Positions 2,556 to 34,274 of a stretch of DNA of 64,000 nucleotides are shown here, in pieces. The notes under the pieces are model-generated. The model saw only the letters and a list, made by a program, of their open reading frames with translations. It was not told where the DNA came from and made no database searches. This DNA is from Salisapilia sapeloensis CBS 127946. Lineage: Eukaryota; Protista; Oomycota. Made by a program: the position numbers and the translations under genes. Positions within the stretch are counted from its first letter, which is position 1; every line of letters starts with the position of its first letter. The stretch is from positions 52,581 to 116,580 of the forward strand of contig JAADVB010000027.1 in assembly GCA_023334545.1 (NCBI GenBank), given 5' to 3'.

Positions 2556-3989
2556 ATGGTCATTTTAAAAGACAGCGGTAGTGAAAGCCCTAGGAGCGTC
2601 TCGAGCGACTCGTCCAGCGTCAGCTCCAGCGCCAGCGAGCACGACCCGAACGATGAACCTGCGCCGCCAGTGCCAGCAGAAGAGCCGCCAAAAGTATCCT
2701 ACCCGGTGGCAGATGTCCACGAAAGTGATACACTGATAACCCCAGAAGAAGAGAATGACAACAGCTCCGTCAGTAGTTCCAGCTTTAGCTCCAGCAGCGA
2801 CAGCGACAATGAACACAATACGACGTTGGAACCAGAGTTCCAGAAGGAGAATACCTCCATTCAAAGTGCAGTCGTAGATGCTGTGTCTGTAGAAAACAAC
2901 GAGGCAGACACTACGGACGGAAACCCCGAGGCTGAAGGACCGACTGATAGTCCGAAAGACACGTTGGATGCTTCCATCCATCTCGATGCTGTGCAGGTAG
3001 AACAGTCCCCTGCAAGTGACGACACGTCCGACGCACCCTTTTCCCTCCAGTCATCCTACCCAAAGCTTCCACCTGCCCCAGTCGACGCCCTCATCTCCCT
3101 CCGGCTCCAATCTCGTCAAGACGAGCTCAAGATCTCCGACGACTTGCTTCAGCAGGAAGTCGCGTCCGCTCGAACGCACTTGCAAGAGCTGGAGGCTAAA
3201 TCTTCTCGTCAGAAGAACAAACTGTCTGCCTCCACCAACTCATTTGCCATTCCTCTTCCTTCCGCGTCTCCTACCGACGCTGGAGCAGTGAGCTGTCGAT
3301 GCGGCAATAACGTCGATGATGGTCGTACAATGGTCCAGTGCGAGGACTGTCTCAAGTGGGAGCATGTCCTGTGCATAGGTGAGCCTCCCTCACGCGTACA
3401 AGACCCTACCTTCCGGTTCTTCTGTCTCGACTGCGAGTGGGAGTTCCGGTGCGTCTGTGGCATACGAGCGAAGAACCATGACGACGGGTCGCACATGATC
3501 TGCTGTGACTTTTGTAAGAACTGGTTGCACTCGTTCTGTGTCAAGGTCGATCCGAACGACCCGCCAGAGACGTACAAGTGTCCTCGATGTAAAAAGGCTG
3601 GCAGTCGAAGGCTAAAGCAGAGGAAGGAGGCGCGCGAACGGAAGAAGAAGGACGTGAGGCCTCCACCTCCGCCACCGACCACGCCTCCTCCGCCACCAGA
3701 GTCTAGTCCTCCGCCGCCTCCTCCATCGACCCCACCGCCAGTCCTGCGTGGGAGAAATACGAACAACTCGAGGTCGAGCGACTTGACTTTTGACGAGGAA
3801 AAGCTCACTGTGGTCGTTCGGCCCAACCTGCCGTCGAGTTCAGGACCATCGAAAGGTCTGTCGCCCATGTCTCCGACAAGTCCGGGAGGAGAGACGCCGA
3901 GAGGAAGCAACGGCAAACGAGGGAGGAAGCGCAAGCCAGGGACTGCCAAGAGTCGATTGGAAAAGAAGCTACGAAAGAGACGTCGTTAA
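2556..3989 (+). CDS. Tandem PHD-finger chromatin protein
   Basis: Two C4HC3 fingers (CRCG...CEDCLKWEHVLC...CLDC; CVCG...CDFCKNWLHSFC...CPRC), acidic Ser-rich N-terminus, poly-Pro, basic C-terminal NLS. Start at the first ATG; an upstream exon is possible. Confidence 0.8.
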   Translation: MVILKDSGSESPRSVSSDSSSVSSSASEHDPNDEPAPPVPAEEPPKVSYPVADVHESDTLITPEEENDNSSVSSSSFSSSSDSDNEHNTTLEPEFQKENTSIQSAVVDAVSVENNEADTTDGNPEAEGPTDSPKDTLDASIHLDAVQVEQSPASDDTSDAPFSLQSSYPKLPPAPVDALISLRLQSRQDELKISDDLLQQEVASARTHLQELEAKSSRQKNKLSASTNSFAIPLPSASPTDAGAVSCRCGNNVDDGRTMVQCEDCLKWEHVLCIGEPPSRVQDPTFRFFCLDCEWEFRCVCGIRAKNHDDGSHMICCDFCKNWLHSFCVKVDPNDPPETYKCPRCKKAGSRRLKQRKEARERKKKDVRPPPPPPTTPPPPPESSPPPPPPSTPPPVLRGRNTNNSRSSDLTFDEEKLTVVVRPNLPSSSGPSKGLSPMSPTSPGGETPRGSNGKRGRKRKPGTAKSRLEKKLRKRRR

Positions 3990-27946: not shown

Positions 27947-29503
27947 CTACTGTCTGCGTTTCTGCTCAAAGTCCGCTTGGATCTGTGCGTTCGTTCGACC
28001 GGATGTTTCGGGTACCATTCTCCATATAAACAGGATGAACCCAGCCATGATGACGACGAACGGAGCGTACTGCCAGTCGACTAGTACATCCGCCAGGTAT
28101 GGGTAGCAGACGCCGATGACGAGGTTGGACGTCCAGTGAGCTCCAATGCACAAGGACACAGCGTTCGCACGCACGGTGTCTGGGAAGACTTCTGCCACGA
28201 CCATCCAGACGAACGGACCGAGACTCATCTGGAACGCAAACACGTACGTCGCGGTGAACACGATTGACAAGACTGACACGTCTGCGACCAACGAGATTGT
28301 CATACCGATAGCGCTGAGGAGCATGGCTGCAGTGCCCCATACCAGCAGAGTCTTGGTGCCGAACTTGTTCGAGCACTTTCCTGCCACCGCTAACGGCATG
28401 ACGTTGAAGGTATCGATGAGGACCGTTCCGATCCGGTCATCACTGATGCCAGCAGATCCGAATAGGTCACTGGAGTAGTAGAACACCGAATTGATACCTG
28501 TCACCTGGCGGCCGATTACTAGTCCTAGCCCTGCGATGAGCTGCAACCTCAGCTCAGGTGAGAAGAGAGGTGGCGAATGGCCTTCCTGCAGCGGTTTAAG
28601 AATTTCTTCTCCCAAGTCACTGTACGAGCTGCTGAGGTTTCCATCCTCATCTCGTTTCGACTCGATCCAGTCCAACGCAGTCGATACGTGCTCTTTCCCG
28701 AAGAGCTTTGCCAGTTCTACTTCCGCTTCATCCCGTCTGTTCTTCAGGAGAAGCCAAGGAGGACTCTCAACAACGCAGAACGGTGCCAGAACAGCAAAGA
28801 GACCTCCTAGTAGGATCGGGACGCCGGCCATGATTCGCCACGCGTAGTATCCATTGTCCTCATCGATCGCAAAGAACAGACATGCAGTTAGAAGCACAGG
28901 GAGGACGGTGGAAATCTGGAAGCAGACACCCAGGACACTACGCATTTGAGGAGGAGAGATTTCGCCAATGTACCCACTGACAACCGCAGACGCGATGCCG
29001 GTAGCTAAGCCTGCAATCAATCGGCCGACGACGAGCTGCCAGATATTCGTCGCACTCACCTGCAAGATCGCTCCGACGGACATGATGGCTGCGTTTAGGT
29101 AGAAAGATTTTTTGGGGCCGTACTTGGAAGCAAATTTACCGATGCTCAGAGCACCGATCATGCCTCCAAGCAGCCACGCATTCACGACAAACGTCCATTG
29201 GGCCTTGGTGTGTCCGGGGAAAATGATGCATGTGCCCTCTTCGACGGGCTCGGCGTTACATTCCTCGGCCTTGTTAAAGAGAGAGTAATTAAATTGGGAG
29301 ATACACCATCCATACTGCACGCCGTGCAACACAGACACGAGGACACTAGAGTAGAGTCTCCATGTTGGCTTGAACTCGACCTCTTCATCCACCGATGGCT
29401 GTAGTAGATCATCGTGGTCCGGATGCTTGGGTGTCACCACAGTCGCGTACGGCACATCGCCGTGAGTAGACGCTGAGCCGCGTGGGTCTGGTGTCGGTGC
29501 CAT
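27947..29503 (-). CDS. MFS sugar porter (GLUT-like hexose transporter)
   Basis: VGRLIAGLATG, YIGEISPPQMR, VESPPWL, RQVTGINSVFYYS, SLGPFVWMVVAEVFP, VPETSGRT. Confidence 0.92.
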   Translation of the reverse strand: MAPTPDPRGSASTHGDVPYATVVTPKHPDHDDLLQPSVDEEVEFKPTWRLYSSVLVSVLHGVQYGWCISQFNYSLFNKAEECNAEPVEEGTCIIFPGHTKAQWTFVVNAWLLGGMIGALSIGKFASKYGPKKSFYLNAAIMSVGAILQVSATNIWQLVVGRLIAGLATGIASAVVSGYIGEISPPQMRSVLGVCFQISTVLPVLLTACLFFAIDEDNGYYAWRIMAGVPILLGGLFAVLAPFCVVESPPWLLLKNRRDEAEVELAKLFGKEHVSTALDWIESKRDEDGNLSSSYSDLGEEILKPLQEGHSPPLFSPELRLQLIAGLGLVIGRQVTGINSVFYYSSDLFGSAGISDDRIGTVLIDTFNVMPLAVAGKCSNKFGTKTLLVWGTAAMLLSAIGMTISLVADVSVLSIVFTATYVFAFQMSLGPFVWMVVAEVFPDTVRANAVSLCIGAHWTSNLVIGVCYPYLADVLVDWQYAPFVVIMAGFILFIWRMVPETSGRTNAQIQADFEQKRRQ

Positions 29504-30864
29504 CCGTGTGTTTGTCTAGCAAATTTATGAATGACGTACGGAGGCTGCGATAGTACGTGTCGATCGTGCTACTGTCGCTTCAAGGTCGATGACCGTTAAG
29601 GCGAGTAATCAACCATTGCGGATTACCATTTCCAAGTACCGCTGATAGAAACGAGTCGTGGTACGGATAGATAGAGCGGTGCAGACATAAGCACGAAGTA
29701 AGGACTTAATCAGCACTTGATGAGCATAGTACCACTACAGAGGAGGCATTTGGACGGTGTCGAGATGGGATGGCGGGTAGTACGATGGATGGGAAAGAAT
29801 TAGTACATGGACACTCGCAGAAGATGACAACGAAGCAGACAAATGTTTAGACGAGGTGTAATGTAAAAGGGTTGTCTATTCACCCATAATGAAAAGACAT
29901 TTATATCCTTGTCACTTATGGACGATGGCGACGAATTTTAAGTGGAAGAACATCGATTCAAAAGAAAGTGATAGCCTGTTGCTGGATGTGGCAAATCTTT
30001 CTTCGGATCGACCTAGAGAAGTTGGAAATGATGGCAGTAGACTCTGATACGAACCCACTAGAGGTCGTACGTGATCTTGTTTGAAAGAGTAGGCTCCGAA
30101 GAGAAAGAATGCGCATACATGAAGTGTTAAAATAGTTTGAGCATTGACTCTGGCGATACGATGCGGCCAATGTTCAAATAGTATTTTGTCGTACAGAGGG
30201 TGGAAGATGATACTCATACAGTTGGACGTGACCGGCAGCACTAGATCGTCTTTTGACGCGACGGACTCGATGCCTACAAGACCACCACAAGATCACTTCA
30301 AGAAGGAAGCGAAGGGCATGGAAATTTAGCTCTTCTTCATAGCCAGAAACATTTGTTTTTTATTTTACTTAAAGAGTTATGACGTGTAACTACGCCCACT
30401 GCCGCTGCTTCGCGCGGCGTTAATTACAGAGATATCTTACGACTACCCTGTGGTAGAAGCCCAAACACATTTGTTACTCGATTCGACGAAGAGGTCAGGT
30501 GCAACTACTCACCATTTATTACGCTTATTTAATCTCCTTATACTTTCACAAGGTCAGTTCTAGCCGATTAAATACTCCTATGTCTATTTACATGGTCAGT
30601 TCAAATGCCAGAGCTTTTATCCGCACGAAGCAGCTACTCTGTACAACATATATGAAATGTACTCTCCTTTCAATTCTTGTAGCGCTTGACTTGGTCTAAA
30701 GTACGATAAAATAATAAACAGCCAAGTTCTCATTCTCCGGTGATTTCCACTGGAGAATACCATGTACCCTCTCAACTACCCCACGTATACTCTTGACAAG
30801 GCAACCATAGACAAGATGAAAACAAAACGAATATTCAGAACTATATTGGTTGCAGTCGAAAGCT

Positions 30865-32440
30865 TTACTCGTTTTCATTGTCCGGTGGTGTGAGCGGGAG
30901 ACTTGCGTCCAAGTCCGCCTCCTTCTTCTTCTCCTGCTCACCGTTCGCGTCTGGCCTCACCCATGTCTTGTTTTGAAAACCTGGTCGAGGTCCCGCGTTC
31001 TGGACACTAACAGAGTTGTTCGTACTATTCTCGCTCGTCGACTGGCTCTTGACGGCATTCGGGTTCACCCAAGTCCGGTTCTGGAATGCCGGTCGAGGCG
31101 GCCGCATCATCATCGGGTTGCCTTGATACATCATCGGGTTACCACGCGGCGGGTACCCCATGTACGGCATCATGTTCGGGTTTCCATAAGGAGGAGGGTA
31201 GAACATCATCTGACCGTACGGCTATAAGACCATCAGCACAAGACCATGACAGCATACAAGAATAAGAAACGTACGTCTGTAGGATAGTTGGAAAAGTTCG
31301 GCGGCATCCCTTGGCTTCCATGCTGCCCTTGCTCGTTGCTTGCGTCCGGGGTCGAGTCGTTCTTGTCGATACGCTCTCCCTTCCGCCTCTTCGACCGTCG
31401 GTCCAGTTCCGCTTGGCTACTATTGATCGGCGGACCAAGCACATGCTTCTTCCCTCGACTGTCGGATGGTTCTTCCTGTGCCTTTCGCTTGTTTGCTCCT
31501 CGAGAAGAGGACAGTTCGTCGCCCATGACCTTGCGCTTCCCGTTGGATGATTCCTCCTTGGGTTTCTCCACAACGCCAAAGCGCTGCGAGCGTCTAGCAA
31601 GTGCCTCCTTCGAGTCATTTCGAGAGCTCGTGAGAGACCGCATGGTGCCTCGAGACGAACCAGAGGACAGAGACACGACCCGTTTCTTGGGTTCCGACGC
31701 CTTGGCAGAAGCTGACTCACTTGCTTTCTTCGGACTCGGCTCCGACTTTGCAGGTTCGGACTCGGTAGTCTTCGCTGGACTTGGTTCTAACTTCGATGCA
31801 GGTTTGGCTGCTTCGTCCGTGGACTGGTAGACTGGAAGTGTCTGTCGAAGCCACTTGACAAAGTCCTGAGCAGAGTCATCGCCGATGAAGTCAATCAATT
31901 CAGACGCGATCTGCTTCATCGGCTTCTTGTTGTTCACCATGACGATCACATAATCCTGTGGCGAGTCGAATCGGTCGATATATACAAGCACATACAATTA
32001 TTTTCTCTTCTTTTTTTCCTATCTACTTTTTTTTTGACATGCATATATGAAAGAGAGCTGCTACGGAAGAGAGTTGGACGATCGCACTCATGCCTTTTGC
32101 ATTCCATTTGGACATGGATAATGCACGCACCTCGCGTTTAACGCACGTTTCAAAGCAGCGAATACATGCACCATTGCACGAATGGCAGCAGAAACGCACG
32201 TGCAACAATCGCATCTCTCAAGCAGACCCCTTTCCATGGCCTCCATAGCTACAGGGAGAATGGAAACGATCGACCTGCCAGGCCAGGCTAGAAAATAGCA
32301 AAGAAAGCACAACGTACCGCCATGACAGAGTCCACTTCAACACCGAGCATCTCGGACAGTTTGTCCTGCGTCTTCTTGGTCAGATCGGCCTTTTGCTCCT
32401 CCGATAGCGTTCGGTCAAAAGCCCACTCGGCGTCGCTCAT
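30865..32440 (-). CDS. PWI-domain protein (RNA-processing factor-like), 3 exons
   Basis: Exon 1 MSDAEWAFD...KLSEMLGVEVDSVMA splices in phase 0 across intron 31956-32317 to DYVIVMVNNKKPMKQIASELIDFIGDDSAQDFVKWL (PWI-like). A second short intron precedes the M/P/Y-rich tail. Confidence 0.75.
32069..32278 (-). ncRNA. Candidate structured intronic RNA element (unknown class)
   Basis: Several hand-folded helices on the gene-sense strand, rich in G-U pairs (see findings). No known family motifs recognised. Confidence 0.4.
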
Positions 32441-32753: not shown

Positions 32754-34274
32754 TCAAACAGCTCGATATTGCGCTCCGAGCTTCCTAAAGAACTCTTGTC
32801 TAGTCCGTAAACTCTGCTTTTCTGCCTCGGAAAGATAGGCCATGCCAACATTAAACGGACATTCTTGCGGCAAGTCCCATTCGTGGAACCATCCTGGGAA
32901 GACATTCTTGTCCAACGCCTTGGTACGATGCAGCTCCTTCTTGTCCGGATCCAGCTCCAACAGAGCTTCACTGTTAACATAAAATGCCGGAGCGTCCTCC
33001 GCTTTCTCTACTTCTACCATCGGGTCAAAGTGCAAAGCTTGTCCGCACAAGTAATCTGTTTCCGCATCTGGATCATTCGGCTTGTGCTTCCTCTGCACTT
33101 CCATGCCGTAGGAGCCGACTCCATAAGGAGACATACCATACTTGGTCTCTGCCAACTCACACGCAACAAAGTACAGCTCTTTGTCACCATAGGAGGGTGG
33201 TTTCTTCGCTCCATCGGCAGCAAAAGATCCTACCAAGGCAGTCGCTCGTACCTGCCTCTGCTTATCCCACAGCAAGACGGACGAGTCGACGTGATGGCCA
33301 CTCCGGAGGTTCCACACGTGACTCGACAGGAGTTCATCGCTAGGGGAAAACGGGAGATACGACGCTTCGTCCATGATATCCTCATTATCTGGACGCAAGG
33401 TAGCACGAGGTCGAGGTTCCGTTCGAAGCACTCTGAACGGATCGAGGTCAAAGGACTGGAAGAAAGAGCTGAGTTCCGTCCGATGGGGCTGTATGATCGA
33501 GTGTTTGATATTACCAGCATACATCCCGTGTTGGGACATTCGGTCTCGGAAGAAGAACGTTCCTGTGGACGTGTACTGCTCCGACTGCCACAAGCGCATT
33601 GGGTCGAGGAAGAACTGGACGTCAGCATCGAGCATCATAACCTGAGTGAACTTGGAGAATACGAGAGAAATGAGCTTGATGTCAAAGCCTCGGAAACGTC
33701 TATGGCAATGCTCTAGACTTCTACAAAAGAGATCATCAGGTAGTTCACTTGCTTCTTTGCAAACGTCGTAGATGCGTACGGCAGATCGATCTTGGTATTC
33801 GACTTGGCTTTGAATCATTTCACGATTCTCTGCATTCAGATCTCCACAATGTGGTACTTCATAGGGAATATCAACACCTCGAGCATCTAAATCTCGAATT
33901 AAGGAGGCGCCTAGCTGGGCAATGCCATCGAAAAGTGGCAGTATGATGCCTCGAGAGCCATTGCCAGCGATATGCAGACCGTTTTCATGTGAGGTCGGGA
34001 GAGCGATTTCAGCAAAGCGTAAGGCTCTTTTCTCTTCTTTCGACAAATCCCGATCAACTCGTAAGATCGTGGACGTGTCATGACTGGTGTGAATGACGTC
34101 GTGCTCGTCGTCCACGGGCCGGAAGGATTTAAATGGGGATAGAAAGAGTGTGCGATATGCGACGGTAGCTGCCGCAACAATAGCAATTAGACCCAAGAAG
34201 AAGTGGATCTTGGATCGTTGCTGCCCGTGAGGAGACGGACGAGCTGTTCGTGCTCTGCGTTGGGGCGCAGCCAT
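32754..34274 (-). CDS. GT71 (MNN2-like) alpha-mannosyltransferase
   Basis: Type II membrane anchor; MMLDADVQFFLDP (DxD), GTFFFRDR, HHVDSSVLLWDK, SYGDKELYFVACELA. Confidence 0.85.
   Translation of the reverse strand: MAAPQRRARTARPSPHGQQRSKIHFFLGLIAIVAAATVAYRTLFLSPFKSFRPVDDEHDVIHTSHDTSTILRVDRDLSKEEKRALRFAEIALPTSHENGLHIAGNGSRGIILPLFDGIAQLGASLIRDLDARGVDIPYEVPHCGDLNAENREMIQSQVEYQDRSAVRIYDVCKEASELPDDLFCRSLEHCHRRFRGFDIKLISLVFSKFTQVMMLDADVQFFLDPMRLWQSEQYTSTGTFFFRDRMSQHGMYAGNIKHSIIQPHRTELSSFFQSFDLDPFRVLRTEPRPRATLRPDNEDIMDEASYLPFSPSDELLSSHVWNLRSGHHVDSSVLLWDKQRQVRATALVGSFAADGAKKPPSYGDKELYFVACELAETKYGMSPYGVGSYGMEVQRKHKPNDPDAETDYLCGQALHFDPMVEVEKAEDAPAFYVNSEALLELDPDKKELHRTKALDKNVFPGWFHEWDLPQECPFNVGMAYLSEAEKQSLRTRQEFFRKLGAQYRAV

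What the first reader, a model, noticed from the sequence alone, without database searches (positions are those of the whole stretch)
31956..32317. 362-nt structured intron that looks like a hairpin-gated poison exon in a PWI-domain gene
Seen: this intron is about 6 times longer than the other introns here. On the sense strand it folds by hand into GCAGGUC/GGUCUGC enclosing UUUCCAU/AUGGAAA and CUCC/GGAG; an 11-bp ACGUGCGUUUC/GAAACGUGCGU helix; CCAUU/AAUGG; GCAU-UCCAU/AUGGA-AUGC; and GAGAG/CUCUC. Several G-U pairs work only on this strand. It also parses as a 43-nt intron (32275-32317), a 279-nt exon (31996-32274) with an in-frame UGA at codon 19, and a 40-nt GTATGT..CACAG intron (31956-31995). 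The internal CAG acceptor lies inside the first helix. Known: RNA-binding proteins often autoregulate by AS-NMD, and eukaryotic TPP riboswitches act by masking splice sites. Inference: an undescribed cis-regulatory RNA switch, or an intron-hosted ncRNA.
Basis: partly seen in the sequence, partly recalled or inferred. Interest (0 to 1): 0.75.

Follow-up and report, generated by a model that had tools for sequence, protein, structure and literature searches.

The report
Conserved long intron in PWI gene
The unusually long first intron of this oomycete's PWI-domain gene has been kept long, at the same spot, across oomycetes and is under selection in relatives, so it is probably a splicing-control element; the proposed hairpin-gated poison exon gets no support.

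Summary
The intron is real: minus strand, 32317-31956, 362 nt, GTACGT..CACAG, phase 0. The fold is not better than chance: z is -1.3 to -1.7 for the whole intron and -0.8, -2.2 and -0.9 for the hairpins. Rfam finds nothing.

Eleven other oomycete orthologs carry an intron at exactly this codon boundary. It is 253-748 nt long, while their second intron is 53-96 nt. A distant ortholog has a 51-nt intron there.

The relatives' introns are constrained. Three Globisporangium-like species are 79-85% identical in intron 1 and 54-71% in intron 2. In Phytophthora and Plasmopara the last 140 nt are 57-80% identical, while four-fold sites are saturated (32-52%).

In the Phytophthora/Plasmopara group a strong long-range helix (-27 to -39 kcal/mol) closes a loop of about 200 nt. 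I could not show an equivalent helix in the window.

Most lineages, the window included, share a 3' module: a purine tract, a branch-site-like UGAC or UAAU just after the last AG, then a 47-110 nt AG-free GU-rich spacer. Internal donor sites are not conserved.

My reading is a conserved splicing-efficiency or intron-retention element.

The parts
32318..32440 (-). Exon 1 of the PWI-like gene (41 codons, ends ...GVEVDSVMA)
   Evidence: The exon end aligns with orthologs (...GVEVDNVMA).
31956..32317 (-). Intron 1, 362 nt, GTACGT...CACAG, phase 0. If retained it gives a stop at codon 10 (VRCAFFAIF*).
   Evidence: The same position is long in 11 oomycete orthologs.
32290..32309 (-). Pyrimidine-rich tract just after the donor (UGCUUUCUUUGCUAUUUUCU)
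   Evidence: An early pyrimidine-rich tract recurs in most orthologs.
32222..32278 (-).
   Evidence: Present, but z = -0.80 with 36 of 200 shuffles as good.
32141..32201 (-).
   Evidence: z = -2.22 with 8 of 200 shuffles as good, uncorrected for choosing it by eye.
31998..32036 (-). Purine/A-rich tract (CAAAAAAAAAGUAGAUAGGAAAAAAAGAAGAGAAAAUAA)
   Evidence: One of only six such tracts on either strand of the 64-kb window. Predicted mostly unpaired, 0.75. Purine tracts of the AAAAGAGA type occur in all six independent lineages.
31996..32002 (-). Candidate distant branch site AAUAAUU (branch A about 42 nt before the acceptor)
   Evidence: It is the only U-R-A-Y motif in the AG-free stretch. Short introns in these species use CUAAC/CUGAU/UUGAC 12-36 nt from the acceptor. 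This assignment is an inference.
31958..32004 (-). AG-free, GU-rich spacer (47 nt) between the last internal AG and the acceptor
   Evidence: The equivalent AG-free stretches are 48-110 nt in 9 of the 11 relatives.
31990..31995 (-).
   Evidence: Present. Not conserved as a donor consensus in orthologs.
31275..31955 (-). Exon 2 (227 codons; DYVIVMVNNKK..., RSQRFGVVEKP, GPPINSSQAELD)
31222..31274 (-). Intron 2, 53 nt, with CUGAU branch motif 12 nt from the acceptor
30865..31221 (-). Exon 3 (118 codons plus stop; two FQN(R/K)TWV motifs, SLPLTPP tail)
   Evidence: The same motifs are in orthologs.

Best explanation
This is the window's copy of an old, selectively maintained long first intron of an oomycete PWI-like nuclear RNA-protein gene.

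The conserved working part is the 3' module. It consists of a purine/A-rich tract, then a branch-site-like motif (UGAC in relatives, UAAU here) placed unusually far from the acceptor, then a long AG-free GU-rich spacer. In the Phytophthora/Plasmopara group this module is brought next to the donor by a conserved long-range helix that loops out about 200 nt. That helix resembles the zipper stems of long yeast introns.

I read the whole arrangement as a device that sets, and probably regulates, how efficiently this intron is removed. An unspliced transcript stops after 9 extra codons, so it would be non-productive. Less efficient splicing would therefore lower output of the protein.

Shown: the conservation of position and length, the sequence constraint in relatives, the helix in the Phytophthora group, and the shared composition and AG-free zone.

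Inferred: the branch-site assignment, that the same logic operates in the window's species, and any feedback by the protein itself.
For: - Position and length. The intron lies between ...VMA and (E/D)YV in all loci. Lengths are 726, 748 and 699 nt (three Globisporangium-like species), 253 (L003), 353 (P. infestans), 332 (P. ramorum), 345 (P. boehmeriae), 308 (Plasmopara), 547 (Albugo), 518 (Pythium insidiosum) and 362 (window). Intron 2 is only 53-96 nt. Typical P. ramorum introns are 50-100 nt (PMC5010894).
- Constraint in the Globisporangium-like trio. Intron 1 is 79-85% identical, against 54-71% for intron 2, 51-69% for the flanks and 68-80% for four-fold sites.
- Constraint in Phytophthora/Plasmopara. 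The last 140 nt are 57-80% identical, against 32-52% for four-fold sites, 39-59% for intron 2 and 39-56% for the 5' part of intron 1. CATGACGTCC is invariant.
- Long-range helix in the four Phytophthora/Plasmopara species. It has 18-26 pairs and dG of -27 to -39 kcal/mol. It beats shuffled arms at p <= 0.006 and is the best partner in the intron in 3 of 4 species. Whole-intron shuffle z is -2.4 to -4.6. RNAalifold finds its core. One pair reads U:G, C-G, U-A and one C.A mismatch across the four species.
- AG-free zones are 99-110 nt in the trio, 48-71 nt in most other species and 47 nt in the window. Per-species P is 0.0007-0.08 for the ten loci with a zone of 47 nt or more.
- UGAC lies within about 10 nt after the last AG in Phytophthora, L003/L005 and Pythium insidiosum. 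Short introns in these species use CUAAC/CUGAU/UUGAC.
- Purine tracts occur in all six independent lineages. The window's tract is one of six in 64 kb.
Against: - Nothing in the window's intron aligns with any relative beyond low-complexity purine runs. For the window itself, only length, position and composition are shared.
- No significant helix was found in the window, in L003, Albugo or Pythium insidiosum, or consistently across the Globisporangium-like trio. Global fold z-scores range from +1.5 to -3.6.
- The window's AG-free stretch alone is weak (P about 0.08).
- Plasmopara has an AG 8 nt before its acceptor, and the CATGACG block of the trio is followed at once by AGs. One branch-site reading therefore does not fit all lineages.
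- A distant ortholog manages with a 51-nt intron.
- The helix rests on only four species.
Confidence: 0.5

Rival explanations
1. One reading: a hairpin-gated poison exon. A 43-nt and a 40-nt mini-intron flank a 279-nt cassette with a premature UGA. Hairpin 1 hides the internal CAG acceptor, giving alternative splicing coupled to NMD.
For: All the strings are present and the cassette has stops at codons 19 and 84. The CAG is predicted paired in the ensemble. Purine-rich tracts are classic exon enhancers (general knowledge). P. ramorum has a similar UUGUAUGUG about 34 nt before its acceptor.
Against: - Hairpin 1 gives z = -0.8.
- No internal GTRNGT exists in P. infestans, Plasmopara, Albugo or Pythium insidiosum. 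GTGAGT in L003 is GTGACC in its close relative L005.
- A candidate upstream acceptor is not conserved even within the Globisporangium-like trio.
- Both mini-introns (43 and 40 nt) are shorter than the 52-60 nt introns seen here.
- By eye I found no U-R-A-Y branch motif in the 43-nt piece. The regex scan shows none inside the 40-nt piece, where the only one in the AG-free zone lies upstream of GUAUGU.
Confidence: 0.07
2. A poly(A)-mimic sensor or an intronic poly(A) site. The genomically encoded A-rich tract in the intron is bound by nuclear poly(A)-binding factors, possibly this ZC3H14/Nab2-like PWI protein's own complex. That would trigger retention and nuclear decay, or premature cleavage and polyadenylation. 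This resembles what I recall of PABPN1 and yeast NAB2 autoregulation.
For: The window's tract has A9 and A7 runs and AAAAUAA followed by a GU/U-rich stretch. AAAAUA and AAUAAA are the commonest hexamers upstream of P. infestans poly(A) sites, with a U-rich/A-rich/U-rich pattern (PMC4360255). Purine tracts recur in every lineage. Some sources name orthologs 'Zinc finger CCCH domain-containing protein 14'.
Against: The relatives' tracts are GA-rich rather than A-rich and lack AAUAAA or AAAAUA. By eye the ortholog sequences show no cysteine/histidine clusters that would form CCCH fingers, and Pfam reports none. No 3'-end reads are available. The PABPN1 and NAB2 precedents come from my memory and were not checked in papers here.
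Confidence: 0.15
3. In the window's species this is an ordinary long intron without special function. Length is inherited, the purine tract and AG-free zone are compositional accidents, and the constraint seen in other clades does not apply here.
For: There is no alignable similarity to any relative. There is no significant structure. The AG-free zone has P about 0.08. A distant ortholog has a short intron.
Against: Twelve of twelve oomycete loci keep the intron long while the neighbouring intron stays short. Two clades show clear constraint. The purine tract is rare in this window and sits at the same relative place as in relatives.
Confidence: 0.15
4. A DNA-level element: an intronic enhancer or internal promoter, for example a bZIP-type TGACG site within the conserved CATGACG block.
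For: CATGACGTCC is invariant in four Phytophthora-group species, and CCATGACGG in the Globisporangium-like trio. TGACG is a bZIP core (general knowledge).
Against: The window, L003 and L005 lack ATGACG. The strand-specific features (purine then GU-rich order, AG avoidance, G-U pairs in the helix) argue for an RNA-level role. The open frame that runs into exon 2 from the intron is broken by indels within the trio.
Confidence: 0.08
5. An intron-hosted small RNA (snoRNA or similar).
For: The conserved 3' block of about 140 nt in Phytophthora is snoRNA-sized. Another long intron of this genome was reported by an earlier follow-up to host an H/ACA snoRNA (a lead only).
Against: There are no Rfam hits in the window or in ten ortholog loci. 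Reading the window's intron I saw no CUGA D box. The ACA next to the acceptor is missing in Plasmopara. The 3' regions are not more structured than shuffles, z about 0, except in Pythium insidiosum.
Confidence: 0.03

Closest known systems
Zipper stems of long Saccharomyces cerevisiae introns (e.g. RPS17B/RP51B), which pair a segment downstream of the donor with one upstream of the branch point
   Same: In Phytophthora and Plasmopara an 18-26 bp helix joins a segment 23-39 nt after the donor to a segment just upstream of the conserved purine/CAUGACG block. It loops out about 200 nt of poorly conserved sequence. Yeast zipper stems likewise shorten the effective donor-to-branch-point distance (PMC2536676 abstract). 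A paper on in-vivo structure probing of yeast introns also turned up (PMC12350175), which I did not read.
   Different: No effect on splicing has been tested. The helix could not be shown in the window or in four other lineages. Oomycetes have many short introns, so here the long intron is a rare exception kept in one gene rather than a common class.
Human exons with distant branch points and long AG dinucleotide exclusion zones (PMC1431707)
   Same: A long AG-free stretch precedes the acceptor, and a branch-like motif sits at its upstream edge. In the human set, as I recall it, this layout marks alternatively spliced, repressible acceptors. I took only the title and abstract from PMC1431707.
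   Different: The spacer here is GU-rich rather than a classical polypyrimidine tract. No branch point has been mapped. Plasmopara and the trio's CATGACG block do not fit simply.
Poison-exon or retained-intron autoregulation of RNA-binding proteins (SR proteins, PABPN1, yeast ribosomal protein genes)
   Same: The gene encodes a nuclear RNA-processing-type protein. It has a conserved non-coding element, and retention gives an early stop.
   Different: No alternative isoform has been seen, no conserved cassette boundaries exist, and no evidence shows that the protein binds its own pre-mRNA. These precedents are recalled from memory.
Other conserved long introns reported by this scan in the same genome (RPS27, UAP56, RPL11)
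   Same: These are over-long introns in RNA-related genes. The earlier notes describe a purine-arm/pyrimidine-arm helix, a far-upstream branch site, and donor pairing respectively.
   Different: They are unchecked AI notes on other loci and served only as leads. Donor masking was tested here and was not significant, p = 0.22-0.92 in all species.

Membership tests
Poison (NMD) cassette exon | Functional internal acceptor and donor used in vivo | not testable with these tools
Poison (NMD) cassette exon | Cassette boundaries conserved in orthologs | tested here: not met
   No internal GTRNGT in P. infestans, Plasmopara, Albugo or Pythium insidiosum. The L003 GTGAGT is GTGACC in L005. The upstream AG is not conserved in the Globisporangium-like trio.
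Poison (NMD) cassette exon | In-frame premature stop in the cassette | tested here: met
   TGA at codon 19 of the 279-nt piece.
Structured cis-regulatory RNA switch (riboswitch-like) | Fold more stable than shuffled controls | tested here: not met
   Window z = -1.26 and -1.73. Hairpins z = -0.8, -2.2 and -0.9.
Structured cis-regulatory RNA switch (riboswitch-like) | Structure conserved with covariation in orthologs | tested here: inconclusive
   The window's hairpins have no alignable counterparts. A different, long-range helix is conserved in the four Phytophthora-group species, with one U:G / C-G / U-A pair.
Structured cis-regulatory RNA switch (riboswitch-like) | Match to a curated RNA family | tested here: not met
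   No Rfam hit at gathering score in the window or in ten loci. The best E-value in the region is 1.9.
Zipper-stem long intron (yeast type) | Complementary segments near the donor and upstream of the branch point | tested here: inconclusive
   Met in P. infestans, P. ramorum, P. boehmeriae and Plasmopara. Not significant in the window (z = -1.4; closing helix matched by 37 of 100 shuffles).
Zipper-stem long intron (yeast type) | Helix needed for efficient splicing | not testable with these tools
   Needs disruption and compensatory mutants.
Distant-branch-point acceptor with AG exclusion zone | AG-free stretch much longer than expected before the acceptor | tested here: met
   47 nt in the window (P about 0.08) and 48-110 nt in 9 of 11 relatives (P 0.0007-0.03).
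Distant-branch-point acceptor with AG exclusion zone | Mapped branch point at the upstream edge of the zone | not testable with these tools
   Only motif positions are available: UGAC or UAAU right after the last AG. Lariat reads would be needed.
Intronic snoRNA | C/D or H/ACA boxes with the matching fold | tested here: not met
   No Rfam hit. By eye I saw no CUGA in the window's intron. ACA is not conserved. The 3' regions are unstructured.
PWI-domain protein (Pfam PF01480) | Domain match above the curated cut-off | tested here: inconclusive
   The window's exons searched apart gave no hit. The ortholog P0019 scores 22.9 bits against a cut-off of 22, P0033 scores 19.9, and P0046 and P0039 score nothing. 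The atlas's nearest cluster is PWI at 0.84.

The most novel reading that the evidence does not exclude
A previously undescribed, oomycete-wide autoregulatory intron in a ZC3H14/Nab2-like PWI protein gene. The conserved purine/A-rich tract next to a distant branch site would be read by the protein's own nuclear poly(A)/mRNA-export machinery, and a long-range helix would set the default splicing rate. Output of the protein would then be controlled by intron retention. Together with the long introns reported in UAP56, RPS27 and RPL11 of this genome, this would form a class of conserved splicing-feedback introns in a lineage whose introns are otherwise 50-100 nt.
Probability: 0.2. Interest if true: 0.7.

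Novelty: new member of a known kind. Interest (0 to 1): 0.45.

Why it matters
Oomycetes include major crop and fish pathogens, and I turned up little on post-transcriptional control in them. My literature searches found nothing on conserved regulatory introns, poison exons or zipper stems in oomycetes.

An over-long intron kept at one codon boundary from Albugo to Phytophthora gives a concrete, testable handle on splicing control in a short-intron lineage. It shows sequence constraint stronger than at silent sites and a conserved long-range helix.

It also corrects annotation. The Globisporangium ultimum model P0006 appears to read part of this intron as coding sequence.

For the finding as written, the value is mostly negative. 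The hand-drawn hairpins and the cassette parse should not be taken further without read evidence.

Tried and rejected
- Rfam, at E-value threshold on the locus and at gathering score on the whole window and ten ortholog loci: nothing.
- Donor masking. The conserved CAUGACG block is the reverse complement of the exon-1 end ...ACGUCAUGGCG. However, duplex energies of the donor region against the intron were no better than shuffles in any species, p = 0.22-0.92. Rejected as unsupported.
- A pyrimidine-tract/purine-tract zipper as a general feature. Long-range stems are more numerous than in shuffles in several species. The best 5'/3' duplex is significant only in the Phytophthora group and one Globisporangium-like species. 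The latter is not reproduced in its two relatives.
- Local folds of the 3' regions: z about 0, except Pythium insidiosum at -3.3.
- Profile searches (nhmmer) with the two clade alignments. There is only a weak cross-clade hit, Globisporangium-like 3' profile against the P. boehmeriae intron, E = 0.045. Nothing hits the window's intron.
- Smith-Waterman of the window's intron against each relative: only purine runs.
- Metagenome scan for more loci: no confirmed relative.
- Exhaustive protein search: no relative above about 52% identity over part of the query, so no close species was available to test the window's own hairpins.
- Exact look-up of two neighbouring proteins: not in the collection.
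- A crude ORF-bridging intron finder for this window was too noisy to give a length distribution.
- The spliced protein of the window was never joined.
Full report
**What is at the locus**

On the minus strand there is a three-exon gene:
- exon 1 at 32440-32318 (MSDAEWAFDRTLSEEQKADLTKKTQDKLSEMLGVEVDSVMA);
- intron 1 at 32317-31956 (362 nt, GTACGT...CACAG, phase 0);
- exon 2 at 31955-31275;
- intron 2 at 31274-31222 (53 nt);
- exon 3 at 31221-30865.

They include the helices, the 43-nt first piece ending GGCAG, and a 279-nt middle piece whose 19th codon is TGA. GTATGT lies 40 nt before the acceptor. If the whole intron is retained, the reading frame stops after nine codons.

Searched apart, they give no Pfam hit. 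The annotated P. infestans ortholog P0019 just reaches Pfam PWI: 22.9 bits against a cut-off of 22, at residues 28-86, across the intron position. A protein-atlas look-up also points to PWI clusters, at a lead-only score of 0.84.

**Is the fold more than chance?**

No.
- The whole intron folds at -107.7 kcal/mol against -100.5 +/- 5.8 for dinucleotide shuffles. That is z = -1.26, with 14 of 100 shuffles as good. A second estimate gave z = -1.73.
- The three hand-drawn hairpins give z = -0.80, -2.22 and -0.92. The 3' 105 nt give +0.49. One z of -2.2 among several hairpins chosen by eye is not evidence.
- Rfam finds nothing near any threshold in the locus, in the 64-kb window or in ten ortholog loci.

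**Orthologs**

A word search with exon 2 found five relatives. A profile search found 48, named by their sources as oomycete 'PWI domain-containing' proteins. They come from Phytophthora, Peronospora, Plasmopara, Bremia, Globisporangium, Pythium, Lagenidium and Albugo.

An exhaustive search of 1.84 billion cluster representatives found no relative above about 52% identity over part of the query. A neighbouring sugar transporter is only 45-49% identical to its best hits, all peronosporalean oomycetes. The window therefore comes from an oomycete without close sequenced relatives in these collections. This is why the window's own hairpins cannot be tested by covariation.

I fetched twelve loci. 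In every oomycete locus an intron sits at exactly the same codon boundary (...VMA | E/D-YV) and it is long:

| Locus | Species | Intron 1 (nt) |
|---|---|---|
| L001, L002, L004 | three Globisporangium-like species | 726, 748, 699 |
| L003 | unnamed | 253 |
| L005 | unnamed (contig cut) | at least 214 |
| L006 | P. infestans | 353 |
| L008 | P. ramorum | 332 |
| L009 | P. boehmeriae | 345 |
| L010 | Plasmopara halstedii | 308 |
| L007 | Albugo candida | 547 |
| L011 | Pythium insidiosum | 518 |
| window | this species | 362 |

The second intron of the same genes is 53-96 nt. A paper on oomycete introns gives 50-100 nt as the typical length in P. ramorum (PMC5010894). A much more distant ortholog (P0051, locus L012, 36% identity) has a 51-nt intron at the same position. 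The position is therefore older than the length.

**Constraint**

| Region | Globisporangium-like trio | Phytophthora/Plasmopara |
|---|---|---|
| Intron 1, whole | 79-85% | 49-68% |
| Intron 1, last 140 nt | not measured separately | 57-80% |
| Intron 1, 5' part | not measured separately | 39-56% |
| Intron 2 | 54-71% | 39-59% |
| Flanks | 51-69% | 32-52% |
| Four-fold degenerate sites | 68-80% | 32-52% |

- In the trio, conservation peaks in the last 260 columns of the alignment.
- In the Phytophthora group, synonymous sites are saturated. P. infestans against Plasmopara is 80% identical in the last 140 nt.
- The Phytophthora-group alignment has invariant blocks such as CATGACGTCC and the core CGCC of a (A/G)(G/A)CGCC(A/C)CC block.
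- The trio's 3' profile weakly finds the orthologous part of the P. boehmeriae intron (E = 0.045). No profile finds the window's intron.

**A conserved long-range helix in the Phytophthora group**

A conserved island in the otherwise drifting 5' part (GGGUGGCG(U/C)UCC..., starting at intron positions 23-39) is the reverse complement of a conserved island upstream of the 3' blocks (...GGAGCGCCACCC, ending 70-103 nt before the acceptor).
- The duplexes have 18-26 pairs and dG of -26.9 to -39.1 kcal/mol.
- They beat shuffled arms at p <= 0.006 and are the best partner in the whole intron in three of four species.
- In a whole-intron shuffle test of the best 5'/3' duplex, z is -4.6, -4.2, -3.0 and -2.4.
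- RNAalifold recovers the core despite a poor alignment.
- One pair reads U:G, C-G and U-A in three species and C.A in the fourth. The outer parts of the helix differ in sequence but still pair.

This looks like the zipper stems of long yeast introns, which shorten the donor-to-branch distance (PMC2536676). With four species the covariation is suggestive, not proven.

The same test is not significant in the window (z = -1.4), in two of the three Globisporangium-like species, or in L003, Albugo and Pythium insidiosum. The window's predicted terminal closing helix is matched by 37 of 100 shuffles. The one significant Globisporangium-like helix is not reproduced in its relatives.

**What the window shares with the relatives**

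Three compositional features recur in the same order:
- A pyrimidine-rich tract soon after the donor.
- A purine-rich tract of the AAAAGAGA type in the 3' third. The window's tract, at 31998-32036, has 34 purines in a 39-nt stretch offset by two bases (intron positions 280-318). It is one of only six such tracts on either strand of the 64 kb.
- A GU-rich stretch running to the acceptor, which is free of AG dinucleotides. It is 99-110 nt in the trio, 48-71 nt in six others, 47 nt in the window, 28 nt in Pythium insidiosum and 8 nt in Plasmopara.

Directly after the last AG sits UGAC in Phytophthora (the invariant CAUGACG), in L003/L005 and in Pythium insidiosum. In the window the only U-R-A-Y motif in the AG-free stretch is UAAU, about 42 nt from the acceptor. 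The short introns of these species have CUAAC, CUAAU, UUGAC or CUGAU 12-36 nt from the acceptor.

I therefore infer a distant branch site followed by an AG exclusion zone. In human genes, as I recall the work behind PMC1431707 (I read only its title and abstract), this layout marks repressible acceptors. This is an inference from motifs, and Plasmopara and the trio's CATGACG block do not fit it simply.

**Against the poison exon**

- Internal donor consensus sites are absent from four relatives' introns. They differ between the close pair L003 and L005.
- A candidate upstream acceptor is not conserved within the trio.
- If the branch site is UAAU at about -42, the proposed 40-nt mini-intron starts downstream of it and has no consensus branch motif of its own.
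- By eye, the 43-nt piece also lacks one.
- Both pieces are shorter than the 52-60 nt introns seen here.

**Other readings tested**

- Donor masking by the CAUGACG block, which is the complement of the exon-1 end, was attractive. Its energies are ordinary, p = 0.22-0.92.
- A snoRNA is unlikely. There are no boxes, no fold and no Rfam hit.
- A poly(A)-mimic or intronic poly(A) site remains possible for the window. It has AAAAUAA followed by a U/GU-rich run, and AAAAUA is the commonest hexamer before P. infestans poly(A) sites (PMC4360255). The relatives' tracts, however, are GA-rich and lack such hexamers.
- A DNA-level bZIP-type site (TGACG) is not excluded, but it does not explain the strand-specific features.

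**Verdict**

The best-supported account is a conserved long intron whose 3' module (purine tract, distant branch-like motif, AG-free spacer) governs how well the intron is spliced. In the Phytophthora group this module works together with a zipper helix. Retention would give a non-productive transcript.

Feedback by the protein itself is speculation. Earlier notes of this scan on the RPS27, UAP56 and RPL11 introns of the same genome gave me the leads for the helix, distant-branch and donor-masking tests. They are not independent evidence.

Noticed in passing
P0006 (Globisporangium ultimum protein): The annotated model has a 47-residue insert (VLFVPAPRQMSG...SKILQAG) exactly at the intron-1 position. 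It seems to read through the donor and to use part of the conserved purine/CATGACG block as coding sequence. This is probably a gene-prediction error caused by the long intron.
   Followed up: partly
L001, L002, L004, L006, L008-L011 downstream of the gene; window 29504-30864: In Phytophthora, Plasmopara, Pythium insidiosum and the Globisporangium-like species the PWI gene is followed by a convergent Mre11 gene (Metallophos + Mre11_DNA_bind). In Albugo the neighbour is a PI3K/FATC protein. In the window the downstream 1.36 kb has no obvious gene.
   Followed up: no
L007:2837-2852 and 3025-3040 (Albugo candida intron 1, positions 211-226 and 399-414): A 16-bp helix, CGUCCAGCAGCAAGCC / GGCUUGCUGCUGGAUG (-31.4 kcal/mol), closes a 172-nt loop. 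It explains this intron's fold z of -3.6. Its arms are not near the donor, unlike the Phytophthora helix.
   Followed up: partly
P0048 (464 aa, Logan contig of 2738 nt): The open frame runs uninterrupted across both intron positions (...VDNVMAEYVTVMV... and on to the C-terminus) but starts only at the internal MLGVEVD. The contig is either transcript-derived or an intron-less copy. I had no look-ups left to fetch it.
   Followed up: no
L012:2808-2858: The distant ortholog (assembly GCA_963681765.1) has a short 51-nt intron at the shared position and an extra short intron inside the PWI-like domain that the oomycete genes lack.
   Followed up: no
window 31560-31600 (exon 2) and orthologs: The motifs L(A)(R/K)RSQRFGVV(E)K, LGPPxNxxQAELD and two C-terminal FQN(K/R)xWV repeats are the most conserved parts outside the PWI-like domain. 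From memory, the RxxRFG motif resembles the UAP56-binding region of SARNP/Tho1. I did not test this.
   Followed up: no
L004:2436-2981 minus strand: The gene caller placed a 181-residue antisense ORF inside intron 1 of one Globisporangium-like species. It is absent from the calls for the two sister species, so it is probably spurious.
   Followed up: partly
P0136 (Pythium brassicae): A partial protein carries both Mannosyl_trans3 and sugar-transporter domains. These are the two families that flank the PWI gene in this window (32754-34274 and 27947-29503). This suggests conserved adjacency or a merged gene model.
   Followed up: no
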